Shown: piece by piece, positions 55,214 through 60,623 of the stretch
Position numbering within the stretch: the stretch's first letter is position 1
Layout of the letters: the number at the start of each line of letters is the position of its first letter
DNA from: Ramazzottius varieornatus
Lineage: Eukaryota; Animalia; Tardigrada
NCBI GenBank assembly: GCA_001949185.1
Contig: BDGG01000021.1
Coordinates: 24,817-88,816 of the forward strand
Reading direction: 5' to 3'
Length of the DNA: 64,000 nt
Notes under the pieces: generated by a model
Database searches by the model: none
What the model was told of the DNA's origin: nothing
Seen by the model: only the letters and a program-made list of their open reading frames with translations
Translations under genes and position numbers: made by a program

Positions 55214-56617
55214 AGCAAATCTGTCGACCACGGTGCGAATGGACCTCGCTGGCGACTTCCACGTTGGAAAGAATGCCGATTCATGACTTCGCTTTGCTAC
55301 ACGATACGCAACAAGAACGAATCAGCCTTTGACCCGCATTCTCACTTGTTATTTTAGCTTCGCCGAGTTTCCTATAGTCATACTTACGCACCTGACGGTA
55401 TTATCAGATGCGCAAGTACGAAATTTTGGTTTTCGACTGATCATCTTTGAAACATTTACTCAACTTTGTGTGGCGACTTTCTAAGTCTAACTTACGTTTG
55501 GTGTTAGACTCTTGTTAATTTAGCAAAACAGAAAACAGGTGGCTGCCACCATTCGAGAAAGAAAGAAAAATTGCGGAAGGAAAGGAGGACCTTCAAAACT
55601 GAGTCTCCTACAAAACTTTTTCTCTCTCGGCAGCGGCGGCCTGATCGAAAAAATGTTAGGTAGTTTAGTACCCCGTAACTTTTGCTATGTAACGAAGAAA
55701 ACACGGTATGGAAAATCAGCCTGCAGAGTTTTAGAAAAAAGGTTTCGTAAAAAACCGGGTGGTGCGCAGCGTTGTCTGAGGTGCGCAAGTTTAGTGAGGT
55801 ATTCGAATTCTGATTGTCATGGCTTTGACCGATCCTTCTGATGTTGTGGTCGGGGATACTGCTGATGATGTGTCTTATAACGCCACTCCAAGTTTGGAAA
55901 GGATCGATCGTCGAGTAGCCTTACAGAATACTCGGTTTCTCAAAAAACTTCTAGTTTTTCAGGGGTTAACTTGCAACTGGCTGACTTTCCGGAGAAAGCT
56001 TTCTAACCAAAACTTTTGCCTGCTTTAAAAAGTACATTCATCCTCCTCTTGTTCCTCATACAGCATGAATTTCTAGCCAACTCAGACGAAGAGCAGTGGT
56101 CAAAACAGTAAACTTGGCAAATTTTTCAAAAATTTGCGGTAAATTGAAACTTCCCTAGGAAATGTCAGGAACAACTTCTGTAGTAAGTTTATTGCTTATT
56201 TAAGGGAAGACAGACGATGTATCGTCTTTACCAAATTAGGAGAGGAAAGGAGCCAGCGTTCCCGAGATATGAATATTCGAACTATGGGTAGAAAAAACCG
56301 AAATTTCATACGTGGGGACCTGATAATACCACAACTAGAGGTAATAATTCAACTTTGAAGATGTGGGTACTATAGTAAATTTTATTTCCGGCTGCTTTCC
56401 ATGGCAGCGCTCTATCCAAGTGCGAAAGGTCCACTAAACGTCGCAGTTCGGTCGGGCAGAGGTCACAGGGCGGATATTGGCATGTGCAATTTGTGCTATT
56501 CTAACGTGTAGTATACTTAACCGTAAACAGTTACCACTCGGTAAGGTGTAACAATGTAGATATGAAGAGAAGAAGGGGGACAGTTTCTGGTGGTGTCACT
56601 TGACTGGGACTGATTTT

Positions 56618-57400
56618 ATGAACTCGCCGCCTGCGCTCCGTTTAACTCCTGTTTCCGTTCACATTTACGATATTTTCTGGACGAACCGTATACTTTCCCG
56701 TGTCGGTTGTGGTTGTTACCATTCCGGTGTTGAAGTCTACGGAAATGAGTACGGCTTCGCTGGACACCCCTTCAGTTTCAGGTGGGCACTTTTGATAACA
56801 CGTACGTACACGTCAGCTACGTCACATGTAGATAGCAAGCTGACTTTTCTGCTGTTTCATAATTTTTCGACCCGTCCAATCGAAACTGTCAATTTTTACG
56901 AGGCAAAGTTCGCTTGAATATTGGCGATTTTTCCCCACAGTGGCCTATTGGAAAAGGAACCAAAAGATTGTGAAGAACTAGGCGACCAGTTTCACTACCG
57001 ACTAAGCCTCCTTCTGGACCACACCACCCTTACCCAAGTCGAAGTTCAGAGCCTGCTGGGCGTATTGGCTCACGAGTGGCACGGTTACACATACCACGTA
57101 CTTCTCCGCAACTGCAATCACTTCTCGGACTGTCTCAGTCGGCTGCTGTGCGGTCGGCAAGTCCTGCCGACTTGGGTCAATCGAATGGCCAACGGTCTTA
57201 GCCACATCCCTTGGCTGGACCGTATGGTACCCAAGGACTGGATCCAGCCATGTCGGGACGAAGAGAACATTGCCGTGGAGAATATCTTGGGCAACGGCTT
57301 GGATATGACGCGCTTGTGGGAGATTACCTTCTTCAATAAGGTCCCCACTAGTCTTTACCTTGGGCGAAGAAGACATAGGCCGAAATTGTTTCAGCCATAA
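56618..57400 (+). CDS. DESI2: PPPDE/DeSI2-like desumoylating/deubiquitinating isopeptidase, 2 exons
   Basis: VHIYD..WTN...G.GCYHSGVEVYGNEYGFAGHPF (catalytic His); YHVLLRNCNHFS (catalytic Cys); PTWVNRMA; intron 56782-56940. Confidence 0.9.
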
Positions 57401-58068
57401 GGGAACCGGAGGATGGTGTCAATAGAAGGGTGTCAGTTGAAAACCATGAGACGTCGGCAAATAAAAGAGAATCTGCGCCGCGCCGCCAAAGTCGGCGTCT
57501 ATCTCCAATTTTTGAGACACAGACGAATGCACCGGGTGATGTATTTTAGAAATCTGTTTTTGTTTTTACAAATAAACACAGGTTATTTCGGTTATTTTAG
57601 CACTGTCGTGCTCAACTGATACATGTACACGCACAATGGGTAATTATGGGGCAGCAAAAATTATGGAACAGACTTTTTCACTACGGCGTACGGAAGCACG
57701 TGCGCACACGACCAATTCACACTAATTTACTTTCAACACTTTTCTACGGTTGAATTTCCACTTTACCGTCCTTCCCGCCTGTCCCATAAGTTTTAATGTC
57801 CCATAATTACCCATCGTGCGTGGACAATAGGTGGTAGCTGCGTGTAGGCATGGTTACATCGTAGAGAGTACCGCATTGACTAAAACACTGCAATGTTATA
57901 TTTGGGCATTCACGACTCGTGAGTCGCCTTATCGATATTACAGCAACGGAAGTTTTGTTTGAGTCGGATACCATCTTTTGGCCTTTGTGCTTTTTCGGGA
58001 TGATTTTGTTGGTGGAATCTGAGTAGTCGGTCTTCGCATTCTTGCCTTCAGAACTACAAGACATTGTC

Positions 58069-60623
58069 ATGTCTGCCGATCCGACGGCCTTTGACCCCTC
58101 GTCATTCAACCCAGCTACCAAAAGCGTAGTGCGTCGAACTTCAATGCTGGTGGAGAACCGCAAGAACCAGAAAGCCGAAGAAGAAGCCGAGAAGTTGCAG
58201 CAACGCAAGAAGAAGACCAGCGCGGCGTTCCAACAAGGTTATGGCGCCGAATTGAACCCCTTCATCTTGGTCGACACCGTCGACTCGCCCTCGGGGAAAC
58301 AGCCCAGCGATGCCACGACAGCTAAACCGCAGGTTGTCCGACGGCGTATCCTGGTCGAGCCGGTCTTTAGTCGCTTGCATAAGCGGACGGGTCATGGAGA
58401 AAGTATGTTCCGACAGATTATCCTCGATCAAGGTATAACCGATACCAGCTTGGTAGAGGAAATTGACCGCGGCGACGACAACGAGTACGAAATGGGAACT
58501 GAAATGCAGCTGAGGAATGTCCATGATTACGTTGACTATAGCAGCAAAGCTTTGGTCACTGGCTTCATCAAAGAACACGTAAGACGACTGTAATTTTCAT
58601 CAATTTTCTTACTGAGAACAAGATCGAAAAAACTTTCGAGATGGACCGAAGCTCGATATTTTGAGACCGATCGGTCTCAAATTATCCTCACTGTGTATTT
58701 TTTCCCCATATATTGGTTTGATTTCGAGCGTGTTGTGGACGGAACTACAGTATGTGTGTCGTTTTGCTGCGACATATTTTGATGTTCTTAGGCAGTGGGA
58801 AACATTCTTCTCTCGGCAACATTCCGGTACCTGGTCCTGTTGGTGATCTTGATTAACGCAGTCTTGATTGGACTGGGAACAGATAACTACCTGAGTATAA
58901 AGTATGGCATTTACATGGAAGCCTTGGAAAATATCATCATGGCAGCCTTTGTAATCGGTGAGTTGCTAACATGCCTGCCAGTTGCGCTGTTCAATCTCTA
59001 GTCCGCTTTTGTCGATGCATTAACCGCCTATTGCTTTTCTAGAAATACTGTTCAAATGGTATTACAACTTTGAAGTGTTCTGGAAGGGCGGATGGAACAT
59101 ACTGGACTTTGTCATCGTCATGATCTTGTTCTTCGGCAGCAGCTTGAAGTTTCTAGGCTCCAGCCGAGTACTTCGCATTCTTCGAGTCATCCGGGCATTC
59201 CGCTCACTGCGGGACACTCCCCTTTTCAGCGGACGTAAGTGCCTTGATGTGCAAATGACAGTCACCACTCTAGCACCTGTAGGAGTACTGACCTGTTTGC
59301 TGGCTTCCTTTATAGTCAGCTTGATCTTCCAAACTGTGGCGCGCTCGGTATCAGACATGGCCAACATCATCCTGCTCATGTATGCCTAGTAAGGAAACAG
59401 CATTCATCTTCTGCTCCATATGACCTGTTGTCTCATGGCACCAACGTTGTCCTCATAGAGAACTCGTCTTTGTAGGCTGATCATGATTTGCTTGTTGGGC
59501 GTCGTCGGTGTACAGCTCTTCGGAGATGCGGTGCCGCTGTACTTTGACTCTTTCTCCGACGCGGTGTTCAGCATCTTCATATGTCAGACCCAGAGGGGAT
59601 GGGTTCGCATTTACAATATGTTCATTGCTGCTGGTGGCGTAAGTCCATTGACTCACTTGGCCCATCCACCATACATCACAGCGGTGCCACAATTGAAATA
59701 CAGTCATATTTTCCTTTCAGGCATATTTCTGGGGTGGCTTCATCTATTTCATCGTGACCATAACACTGACATCGTTCGTTTTGAAGAATCTGTTTGTGGC
59801 GGTACGTTCTATGTAGAAATTTGTCGTGCTGATAAATCGAATCGTGTCCTGCAGGCCTGCGTGGCAATCTTCGGTACTTTTCGCCTAGTAGGGCGAACTG
59901 TACAGGCACGAAAGAAAAAGTCTGGACTAGTACAAAGGCTCGATCAAGCGTGGAAAAATATTTAACCGTAGAAAATTGTCCAGAATGGAGTGAAACGGAA
60001 TGCTTTTTCCGATAATCTTCTACGGTTTAATCTTACGCTGCAGTCTTTTTCGCCATGGTCCAGACTTCTCTTCGGACGTCTACAGCCCATAGTGAAATGA
60101 AACCGAGGGAAAGCAAGACACTAGTTCTTCTCCAGTCTAAAGTTCAGGTAACTGGCTCTGATGTTCATAGGTGGTGGTTACAAACTTGCGCAAGGAAATG
60201 AAAGCCGCACAGGAAGAACGCGACCGTAAAGAAGCCAAGAAAAACAAAACAAAACCTGCCGTCAAAAATTCCGCCGAAGGCGATGAAGATGGCGAAGAAG
60301 GCGAAAGCGAGGAAGAAGGTGAAGCGGAGAACAAGCTTGAACCTTTGATTGCCGCAGCCCGAGGTTGGAAAGGCGGTGACAGCCAACGGCGAGTTCTCCT
60401 ACCGATGTTTCTCAATCTGGTCACACTGGAGGATCTGCAGAAGTATCTGTTTCTCCAAGTGGCTCTCGAAGAGAACCTCACTGTGTATCGGCAGCTTCGA
60501 GCCAGACTGAAAGATATCTACGGAGAAGTGCATCTGATGAACGAATCGTACTTTAAAGAGCTGCGGAAGAAGCCACCGCAGCAGATGAACGCTCAACCTC
60601 CAAAAAGACGGTCGAAAGTCTGA
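58069..60623 (+). CDS. CATSPER4: CatSper4-like single-domain 6-TM cation channel alpha subunit, 7 exons
   Basis: FWKGGWNILDF, S4 RVLRILRVIRAFRSLR, SVSDMANII, GVQLFGDAVP.YF, pore FICQTQRGW, GGFIYFI...NLFVAVVVTNL, C-terminal ALEENLTVYRQLR...GEV; all junctions join in frame. Confidence 0.88.
59895..60090. repeat. Imperfect fold-back element in the last CatSper intron
   Basis: AAGTCTGGAC/GTCCAGACTT and ACCGTAGAA/TTCTACGGT nested inverted pairs. Confidence 0.55.

What the first reader, a model, noticed from the sequence alone, without database searches (positions are those of the whole stretch)
59576..59602. CatSper4-like channel with Arg in place of the selectivity-filter Asp (TQRGW)
Seen: the pore reads FICQTQRGW with codon AGG at 59594-59596, three substitutions away from an Asp codon, so a single base error is unlikely; the rest of the gene is intact. 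Known: mammalian CatSper1-4 each contribute an Asp (TLDDW, TLDHW, TVDGW, TQDGW) to a Ca2+-selective ring, while one basic residue in the ring underlies Na+ selectivity in Nav (DEKA) and NALCN (EEKE). Inference: this lineage may have a re-tuned, monovalent-selective or non-conducting CatSper complex.
Basis: partly seen in the sequence, partly recalled or inferred. Interest (0 to 1): 0.85.

Follow-up and report, generated by a model that had tools for sequence, protein, structure and literature searches.

The report
Tardigrade CatSper4 with arginine pore filter
A water bear's sperm calcium-channel gene (CatSper4) carries a positively charged arginine where other described animals have the negatively charged aspartate thought to select calcium, and four other tardigrade-clade sequences share the change, so these animals probably run this sperm channel with altered ion selectivity.

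Summary
Window 59576-59602 (+) reads F-I-C-Q-T-Q-R-G-W, with AGG (Arg) at 59594-59596. It lies in the pore exon of an intact 7-exon, 542-codon gene at 58069-60623.

- **Genome:** Ramazzottius varieornatus (tardigrade). Its public model for this gene is mis-fused to the upstream gene and stops before the pore, so the Arg is absent from that public protein.
- **Orthology:** the gene is the single CatSper4 orthologue, by sequence, tree and fold. The best solved match is mouse CatSper4 (7eeb_D), with the Arg aligned to the filter Asp.
- **Conservation:** the same Q-T-Q-R-G-W motif occurs in Hypsibius exemplaris, in the sexually reproducing Paramacrobiotus metropolitanus, and in two unnamed assemblies. 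52 other CatSper4-like proteins have Asp, Limulus has Glu, and one unplaced fragment has Lys.
- **Rest of the complex:** the genome also holds one CatSper1, one CatSper2 and one CatSper3, all keeping Asp, plus a CatSper-beta hit. The inferred ring is D/D/D/R.

Sequencing error and pseudogene decay are effectively excluded. The functional reading is inference by analogy with the Nav DERA mutant and NALCN: Ca2+ permeation lost or reduced, monovalent cations conducted.

The scan had already noted this same gene on this window (s1-795722), not on other DNA.

The parts
58069..58578 (+). Exon 1: start ATG and cytoplasmic N-terminal region (170 codons)
   Evidence: In-frame stop upstream at 58024-58026 and GTAAGA donor at 58579. 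55% / 39% identity to the Hypsibius / Paramacrobiotus orthologues.
58792..58957 (+). Exon 2: S1 and start of S2
   Evidence: AG acceptor at 58790-91 and GTGAGT donor at 58958. 67% / 62% identity to the orthologues.
59043..59234 (+). Exon 3: end of S2, S3 and S4 (S4 reads R-V-L-R-I-L-R-V-I-R-A-F-R-S-L-R)
   Evidence: Pfam Ion_trans 30.9 bits. 89% / 84% identity to the orthologues, the most conserved exon.
59316..59379 (+). Exon 4: S4-S5 linker and start of S5
   Evidence: Splice sites TTATAG / GTATGC. 80% / 75% identity. The public model RvY_18773 reads through intron 3 and this exon, then stops at TAG 59387-59389.
59476..59638 (+). Exon 5: S5, pore helix P1, selectivity filter, start of P2
   Evidence: Best solved match is CatSper4, 7eeb_D / 9ubw_D. 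66 relatives in the 1.84-billion-protein library, nearly all with T-Q-D-G-W.
59594..59596 (+). AGG codon: Arg in the column of the CatSper filter Asp
   Evidence: In the AlphaFold model of the Paramacrobiotus orthologue, the equivalent Arg335 lies in the 3-residue loop between P1 (321-333) and P2 (337-347), in blocks of mean pLDDT 85-93.
59585..59587 (+). CAG codon: Gln three residues before the Arg, co-substituted with it
   Evidence: All four tardigrade-clade database sequences and the window have Gln here. The other CatSper4-likes have I/V/M/L (rarely T/A).
59721..59801 (+). Exon 6: S6 inner helix
   Evidence: Phase-0 TTTCAG acceptor and GTACGT donor. 67% identity to Paramacrobiotus. Missing from the Hypsibius public model.
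60171..60623 (+). Exon 7: end of S6, cytoplasmic C-terminal helical region, stop TGA at 60621-60623
   Evidence: 59% / 47% identity. The equivalent region models as a long helix in the orthologue.

Best explanation
This is the single CatSper4 gene of the tardigrade Ramazzottius varieornatus. CatSper4 is one of four pore-forming subunits of the sperm cation channel CatSper. In the sampled tardigrade clade the filter Asp of this subunit has been replaced by Arg, together with a Gln three residues upstream, and the change has been kept while the channel core stayed conserved. CatSper1, 2 and 3 of the same genome keep their Asp, so a 1:1:1:1 heterotetramer would have a D/D/D/R ring (net charge -2 instead of -4).

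Shown here: orthology, intactness, conservation of the Arg, and Asp in the other three subunits.

Inferred: the guanidinium group sits in or at the ring. As in the Nav DERA mutant and the Lys-bearing NALCN pore, it would repel divalent ions. The tardigrade channel would then conduct monovalent cations with little Na+/K+ discrimination and would admit little or no Ca2+. It would act by depolarising the flagellum rather than by direct Ca2+ entry.
For: Identity and orthology:
- The pore exon and the full-length orthologue both hit CatSper4 best among single-repeat chains (118.8 bits against about 76 for bacterial Nav).
- The Foldseek top hits are 7eeb_D (TM 0.82 normalised to target) and 9ubw_D.
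- The tree places the Arg-bearing sequences as one clade (support 100) inside the CatSper4 clade (support 99), apart from CatSper3-like and bacterial channels.

Gene state:
- Seven exons, six GT..AG introns, 1629 nt, open throughout.
- S2-S4 is 84-89% identical and S4-S5 75-80% identical to the orthologues, against 39-59% in the termini.

Conservation of the Arg:
- It is shared by Hypsibius exemplaris OQV14040.1, the Paramacrobiotus metropolitanus CatSper4-like protein, and two unnamed assemblies.
- P. metropolitanus is gonochoristic, so it makes sperm (PMC11191345).

Other subunits:
- CatSper1 has L-T-F-D-D-W, CatSper2 F-T-I-D-H-W and CatSper3 T-S-D-S-W.
- There is only one CatSper4 locus.
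- CATSPERB_C scores 53 bits.

Analogy:
- The Nav1.4 DERA mutant is non-selective for Na+/K+ and impermeable to external Ca2+ (PMC2233758; PMC5008630).
- NALCN switches between EEEE and EKEE/EEKE pores (PMC3557258).
Against: - There is no functional, expression or read-level evidence for any tardigrade CatSper.
- The side-chain orientation of the Arg is unknown. It could pair with a neighbouring Asp and leave a Ca2+ site, since CatSper1 also offers a second Asp in D-D-W.
- The 1:1:1:1 stoichiometry is assumed from the mouse structure.
- The DERA analogy comes from a four-repeat Na+ channel with only two acidic ring residues.
- R. varieornatus and H. exemplaris reproduce by parthenogenesis (PMC13389832), so in this genome the gene may be little used.
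- dN/dS could not be computed.
Confidence: 0.5

Rival explanations
1. The channel stays Ca2+-permeable. The Arg side chain is turned away from the axis or salt-bridged (to a neighbouring filter Asp, or held by the co-substituted Gln). Three Asp plus the extra Asp of CatSper1 (D-D-W) would still bind and pass Ca2+, with only affinity, block or pH dependence changed.
For: All other invariant filter residues (T, Q, G, W) and the three Asp of CatSper1-3 are kept. That would be expected if a Ca2+ site were still under selection. The coupled hydrophobic-to-Gln change at -3 suggests a local structural accommodation of the Arg.
Against: In the Nav DEKA locus a basic residue, Lys or Arg, prevents inward Ca2+ current (PMC2233758). 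Removing one of four carboxylates and adding a cation changes the ring charge by two units. No compensating new acidic residue appears in the filter motifs of CatSper1-4.
Confidence: 0.27
2. The pore is non-conducting. The Arg plugs or neutralises the filter, and the complex is kept for a non-conducting role such as flagellar scaffold, voltage or pH sensor, or organiser of signalling domains.
For: Arg is bulky and sits at the narrowest point by homology. The large CatSper complex has many non-pore subunits, at least one of which (beta) is present here.
Against: S6, the pore helices and the three Asp of the partner subunits remain conserved, which a dead pore would not require. The Nav DERA mutant still conducts monovalent cations (PMC2233758).
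Confidence: 0.12
3. The Asp-Arg pairing in a narrow filter makes the pore proton-selective or proton-preferring, as proposed for the Asp-Arg filter of the voltage-gated proton channel Hv1 (recalled from memory, not checked here).
For: Only the composition supports this: acidic residues facing one Arg at a constriction.
Against: No evidence was obtained here. The CatSper filter is much wider than the Hv1 constriction. Three unpaired or partly paired Asp would still attract metal cations.
Confidence: 0.05
4. It is an artefact or decay: an assembly or sequencing error, or a gene drifting under relaxed selection in a parthenogenetic species.
For: R. varieornatus reproduces by parthenogenesis (PMC13389832). 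Reads could not be consulted.
Against: The same Arg and Gln occur in four other sequences from at least two other named genera, one of them gonochoristic (PMC11191345). The gene has no stop or frameshift, and its transmembrane core is 75-89% identical to the orthologues. CatSper3 is also complete.
Confidence: 0.02

Closest known systems
Mammalian CatSper4 (mouse, chain D of PDB 7EEB and 9UBW)
   Same: Single-repeat 6TM fold with a charged S4. The pore signature F-I-C-x-T-Q-x-G-W is shared. It is the best sequence and fold match. CatSper1-3 and CatSper-beta are present in the same genome.
   Different: The filter Asp is Arg, and the hydrophobic residue at -3 is Gln. The tardigrade stem branch is long (1.3-1.9 substitutions per site). 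The host is a protostome, a group in which the complex was reported absent in 2008 (PMC2572835).
Voltage-gated sodium channel DEKA filter and its DERA mutant (rat Nav1.4 K1237R)
   Same: One basic residue in an otherwise acidic or neutral four-residue ring at the homologous P-loop position. DERA shows what Arg does there: conduction without Na+/K+ discrimination and no inward Ca2+ current (PMC2233758, PMC5008630).
   Different: Nav is one polypeptide of four repeats with ring D/E/K/A (two acidic residues). Here there are four separate subunits and three Asp. The natural residue in Nav is Lys, not Arg.
NALCN with EEKE / EKEE versus EEEE pores
   Same: A Ca2+-channel-like all-acidic ring converted in evolution to a ring with one basic residue and net charge -2 (PMC3557258). 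This is the same arithmetic as D/D/D/R.
   Different: Lys rather than Arg, a four-repeat channel, and in invertebrates the switch is made by alternative exons. No alternative pore exon was found in this gene (locus L001).
Limulus polyphemus CatSper4-like protein (XP_013781768.1)
   Same: The only named non-tardigrade panarthropod CatSper4 recovered here, with the same family and pore signature.
   Different: Its filter is T-Q-E-G-W, so it is still acidic. A Glu codon would allow a one-step-at-a-time path Glu (GAG) to Lys (AAG) to Arg (AGG). That path is speculation.

Membership tests
CatSper4 (pore-forming subunit of the sperm cation channel) | Single-repeat six-transmembrane voltage-gated-like fold (Ion_trans) | tested here: met
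   Pfam PF00520 on exons 3, 5 and 6. The model of the Paramacrobiotus orthologue has block-mean pLDDT 80-96 across the transmembrane core, and its top PDB hits are 6TM channels.
CatSper4 (pore-forming subunit of the sperm cation channel) | Closer to CatSper4 than to CatSper1-3 or other channels | tested here: met
   Pore exon: CatSper4 at 42 bits, next single-repeat chain at 24 bits. Orthologue P0004: 7eeb_D at 118.8 bits, with no CatSper1-3 chain among the 60 best hits shown (cut-off 72.8 bits). Fold: 7eeb_D ranks first. The tree places the gene inside the CatSper4 clade, support 99.
CatSper4 (pore-forming subunit of the sperm cation channel) | Pore signature T-Q-D-G-W with the 'absolutely conserved' key Asp (PMC2572835) | tested here: not met
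   T, Q, G and W are invariant and present, but the Asp column holds Arg. I still file the gene as a CatSper4 orthologue by descent. It fails the functional signature, and that failure is the finding.
CatSper4 (pore-forming subunit of the sperm cation channel) | Positively charged S4 voltage-sensor helix | tested here: met
   Exon 3 reads R-V-L-R-I-L-R-V-I-R-A-F-R-S-L-R, with Arg at every third position.
CatSper4 (pore-forming subunit of the sperm cation channel) | Co-occurrence with CatSper1, 2, 3 and auxiliary subunits in the genome | tested here: met
   CatSper1 at G000:C1 about 7.741 Mb, CatSper2 at C1 about 0.807 Mb, CatSper3 at C13 about 48 kb. CATSPERB_C at C5:1381612-1382319. The Pfam beta-propeller models of gamma and delta gave no hit. 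Other readers' notes report gamma, epsilon, tau and EFCAB9, which I did not check.
CatSper4 (pore-forming subunit of the sperm cation channel) | Sperm-specific expression, flagellar location, Ca2+-selective alkalinisation-activated current | not testable with these tools
No tardigrade CatSper paper was found in the held library. No CatSper entry was found in the supplements of the P. metropolitanus sex-biased transcriptome paper.
Channels with one basic residue in the filter ring (Nav DEKA, NALCN EEKE/EKEE) | Exactly one basic residue among the four homologous P-loop positions | tested here: inconclusive
   The four genes give D, D, D, R. That they assemble 1:1:1:1 as in mouse is assumed, not shown.
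Channels with one basic residue in the filter ring (Nav DEKA, NALCN EEKE/EKEE) | The basic residue is Lys, on a four-repeat polypeptide | tested here: not met
   The residue is Arg and the subunits are separate genes. This is therefore a functional analogy only, not membership.

The most novel reading that the evidence does not exclude
Eutardigrades have a natural D/D/D/R CatSper that no longer admits Ca2+. It would work as a voltage- and pH-gated monovalent (or proton-preferring) conductance. That would mean the conserved CatSper machinery can control sperm through membrane potential alone. It would also be the first natural case of Arg, rather than Lys, converting a Ca2+-type ring in this channel superfamily.
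Probability: 0.35. Interest if true: 0.8.

Novelty: new variant of a known kind. Interest (0 to 1): 0.66.

Why it matters
The CatSper filter Asp has been described as absolutely conserved, and all four subunits are said to share one filter (PMC2572835, PMC13674862). A lineage that fixed Arg in one subunit, while keeping the other three Asp and the rest of the complex, is a natural mutagenesis experiment. The channel in question still cannot be expressed heterologously (my recollection, not checked here).

It gives a concrete, testable prediction: a D/D/D/R ring excludes Ca2+ and passes monovalent cations. It also extends the rule 'one basic residue re-tunes a Ca2+-type ring', known from Nav and NALCN, to a heterotetramer.

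Together with the Limulus sequence, it documents a CatSper set in panarthropods, a group long listed as lacking it. A practical point follows: the public R. varieornatus and H. exemplaris models of this gene are wrong, so proteome-based surveys would miss or misread the pore.

Tried and rejected
- **Reads and RNA:** There is no read or transcript confirmation of the codon.
- **DNA of the orthologues:** I therefore have no orthologue codons, no dN/dS, and no species names for P0001, P0002 and P0065.
- The joined protein was never built or searched. Full-length analyses (structure, fold search, trees) used the public orthologues P0079 and P0004 instead.
- **First structure model:** the P0004 model is of limited use, because that public model lacks the S6 exon. 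I repeated the prediction with P0079.
- **Auxiliary subunits:** the Pfam beta-propeller models of CatSper-gamma and -delta found nothing in the genome. The tool itself warns that this does not show absence.
- **Second, canonical CatSper4 copy:** none found. The pore exon hits only itself. Limulus CatSper4 hits only the four CatSper loci and one four-repeat channel. A pore profile run over 40 Ion_trans loci found nothing more.
- **Alternative pore exon inside the gene:** none found (locus L001).
- **Lys-bearing fragment P0065:** I considered that it might be a heterotardigrade. The tree does not join it to the tardigrade clade, and it has no named close relative, so its origin stays unknown.
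- **His-rich stretch upstream of the CatSper1 candidate:** this open frame contains its own hydrophobic segment and may be a separate gene. I make no CatSper1 N-terminal claim from it.
- **Complex prediction:** not used. The four pore domains of a single species were not available as unaltered sequences.
Full report
**Observation.** The stretch 59576-59602 on the + strand reads TTC ATA TGT CAG ACC CAG AGG GGA TGG, which is F-I-C-Q-T-Q-R-G-W, and the Arg codon AGG is at 59594-59596. HMMER aligns the exon to the solved mouse CatSper4 chains (7eeb_D, 9ubw_D; E 4e-9 and 5e-10). The motif lies over F-I-C-I-T-Q-D-G-W, so the Arg occupies the column of the filter Asp without ambiguity.

**Gene model.** The motif belongs to a seven-exon gene on the + strand:
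- E1 58069-58578
- E2 58792-58957
- E3 59043-59234
- E4 59316-59379
- E5 59476-59638 (pore)
- E6 59721-59801 (S6)
- E7 60171-60623 (TGA at 60621-60623)

The exons sum to 1629 nt (542 codons plus the stop). All six introns are GT..AG and 81-369 nt long, and no exon holds a stop. Exon 3 carries an S4 with Arg at every third position. I never built or submitted the joined protein, so analyses that need a full-length chain used public orthologues.

**Which genome, and the state of its annotation.** The assembly is 55.8 Mb in 200 contigs. The public protein RvY_18773 of Ramazzottius varieornatus matches the window's exons 2-4 at 99-100%. That model is faulty. It fuses the upstream PPPDE-domain gene (about 55.8-57.4 kb) to this gene, reads through intron 3, and ends at the TAG at 59387-59389. 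It therefore lacks the pore and S6, and UniRef names it after the PPPDE domain. [quoted passage not shown] The Arg is therefore not visible in the public R. varieornatus proteome.

**Orthology.** Four lines of evidence agree.
- Among single-repeat chains of the PDB, the pore exon hits CatSper4 at 42 bits and the next chain at 24 bits.
- The full Hypsibius orthologue hits 7eeb_D at 118.8 bits in one stretch. Bacterial Nav channels score about 76 bits, and no CatSper1-3 chain appears among the 60 best hits shown.
- An AlphaFold model of the Paramacrobiotus orthologue has block-mean pLDDT 80-96 across the transmembrane core. Its best Foldseek matches are 7eeb_D (TM 0.82 on the target, 33% identity) and 9ubw_D, ahead of NavAb.
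- In maximum-likelihood trees the Arg-bearing sequences form one clade (SH-aLRT 100) inside the CatSper4 clade (support 99). CatSper3-like and bacterial channels fall outside. The tardigrade stem is long, at 1.3-1.9 changes per site.

Sources name the relatives CatSper4-like in Limulus, Acropora, Antedon and Lytechinus.

**Is the Arg real and kept?** A scan of 1.84 billion representative proteins with the pore exon gave 66 hits. Of the 58 sequences that show the CatSper4 signature (57 of those hits plus the Paramacrobiotus protein found), 52 have Asp. Four have Arg, one has Glu (Limulus) and one has Lys (P0065, a 206-residue fragment of unknown origin).
- The four Arg sequences are H. exemplaris, Paramacrobiotus metropolitanus, and two unnamed fragments. 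One of the fragments is sister to Paramacrobiotus.
- With the window that makes five distinct sequences, 60-72% identical in the pore exon, all reading Q-T-Q-R-G-W.
- All five also share Gln at -3, where other CatSper4s have I, V, M or L.
- Exon-wise identity to the two named orthologues is 84-89% in S2-S4 and 75-80% in S4-S5. It is 61-70% in the pore exon and 39-59% in the termini. That is the pattern of a constrained channel core.

The Lys fragment does not group with tardigrades and has no named close relative. It may be an independent basic substitution in the same subunit, but nothing more can be said.

**The rest of the ring.** I searched the genome for Ion_trans (125 exon-level hits). 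I then fetched 40 candidate single-repeat loci and scanned them with motif and profile searches. Three further CatSper-type genes came out.
- **CatSper1:** G000:C1 at about 7.741 Mb, minus strand. The filter reads L-T-F-D-D-W and is split from the pore helix by a 70-nt GT..AG intron. Its pore piece hits mouse CatSper1 best, with the Asp aligned, and its S1-S4 piece scores 86 bits to CatSper1 against 42 to CatSper3.
- **CatSper2:** G000:C1 at about 0.807 Mb. It reads F-T-I-D-H-W and hits CatSper2 best in both halves.
- **CatSper3:** G000:C13 at about 48 kb. It reads T-S-D-S-W. Its relatives are named CatSper3-like in Paramacrobiotus (61%) and Ptychodera (41%), its pore piece hits CatSper3 best, and the gene covers residues 10-384 of the 384-residue Paramacrobiotus protein without stops.

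The four tardigrade-like CatSper3 sequences recovered all keep the Asp. Limulus CatSper4 used as a query finds only these four loci and one four-repeat channel, and the pore exon finds only itself. There is thus one CatSper4 and no canonical second copy. No alternative pore exon lies within the gene. The Pfam CATSPERB_C model hits G000:C5:1381612-1382319 at 53 bits. The gamma and delta propeller models hit nothing, which the tool warns is not evidence of absence. Other readers' unchecked notes list gamma, epsilon, tau and EFCAB9 in this genome. Assuming the mouse 1:1:1:1 assembly, the ring is D/D/D/R.

**Likely mechanism (inference).** In the model of the Paramacrobiotus orthologue the Arg lies in the three-residue loop between pore helices P1 (321-333) and P2 (337-347), which is the filter turn. 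Replacing one of four carboxylates by a guanidinium changes the ring charge from -4 to -2.

The closest experimental precedent is the DEKA locus of Nav1.4. With Arg in place of Lys (DERA), the channel still conducts but no longer distinguishes Na+ from K+. It also carries no inward Ca2+ current, and the authors attribute this to electrostatic repulsion by the basic residue (PMC2233758). Simulations explain why Arg, unlike Lys, fails to impose Na+/K+ selectivity (PMC5008630). NALCN shows the same evolutionary move from an all-acidic EEEE ring to EKEE/EEKE (PMC3557258).

My best reading is therefore a conducting, largely non-selective monovalent pore with Ca2+ excluded or much reduced. I put this at about 0.5. 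The rivals are:
- a Ca2+-permeable pore with the Arg turned aside or salt-bridged (about 0.27);
- a non-conducting complex (about 0.12);
- a proton-preferring Asp-Arg filter (about 0.05);
- artefact or decay (about 0.02).

**Caveats.**
- R. varieornatus and H. exemplaris reproduce by parthenogenesis, with males only occasionally seen in Ramazzottius (PMC13389832). In this genome the channel may be rarely used.
- It is notable that CatSper3 and CatSper4 are complete here and that every piece read of the CatSper1 and CatSper2 candidates is open.
- The Arg is shared with the gonochoristic P. metropolitanus (PMC11191345), whose males make sperm, so it is compatible with sexual reproduction.
- Nothing here shows expression, assembly or current.

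**Novelty.** Cai and Clapham (PMC2572835) reported the key Asp as absolutely conserved and the complex as absent from sampled protostomes. A 2026 paper still states that the four subunits share a conserved filter (PMC13674862). Full-text searches for CatSper together with tardigrade, Hypsibius, Limulus or Ecdysozoa found no treatment of this. The Hypsibius and Paramacrobiotus proteins are public with automatic names, so the sequences are known. The Arg, its conservation and the D/D/D/R ring appear to be undescribed. I class it as a new variant of a known kind.

Noticed in passing
window 55819-59389: The public gene model RvY_18773 (526 aa, named after its PPPDE domain) fuses the upstream PPPDE/DeSI-type gene (about 55.8-57.4 kb) with the first four exons of CatSper4. 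It reads through intron 3 and stops at TAG 59387-59389, so it lacks the pore and S6.
   Followed up: yes
P0004 (Hypsibius exemplaris OQV14040.1) against window 59721-59801: The Hypsibius public CatSper4 model jumps from the pore exon straight to the last exon. The 27-residue S6 exon is missing (22% spurious identity, against 67% for Paramacrobiotus), which is probably an annotation error.
   Followed up: partly
L040 = G000:C1:7738000-7745000 (minus); L038 = G000:C1:803900-810800 (+); L029 = G000:C13:45200-51800 (+): These are the CatSper1, CatSper2 and CatSper3 genes of the same genome, with filters L-T-F-D-D-W, F-T-I-D-H-W and T-S-D-S-W. All keep the Asp. CatSper3 is complete against its Paramacrobiotus orthologue.
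   Followed up: yes
G000:C5:1381612-1382319 (+): A Pfam CATSPERB_C hit (53 bits, above cut-off, open frame of 269 aa). This is a CatSper-beta homologue in a tardigrade.
   Followed up: partly
P0065 (206 aa, NCBI assembly, contig of 3157 bases, no name): A CatSper4-like fragment with T-Q-K-G-W, so Lys sits in the same filter column. It does not group with tardigrades in the tree and has no named close relative. It may be an independent basic substitution in CatSper4.
   Followed up: partly
P0007 (Limulus polyphemus XP_013781768.1): The horseshoe-crab CatSper4-like protein has Glu instead of Asp in the filter (T-Q-E-G-W). It is the only Glu among 58 CatSper4-like sequences.
   Followed up: no
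whole genome G000: A species that reproduces by parthenogenesis (PMC13389832) keeps apparently open genes for all four sperm-channel pore subunits. No stop or frameshift was seen in CatSper4, CatSper3, or the pieces read of CatSper1 and CatSper2.
   Followed up: partly
L040, reverse-strand positions about 1631-2545 (upstream of the CatSper1 candidate): A 305-residue open frame with a His-rich stretch, acidic Pro/Asp/Lys repeats and one hydrophobic segment. It is unclear whether it is part of CatSper1 (whose N-terminus is His-rich in other animals) or a separate single-pass membrane protein.
   Followed up: no
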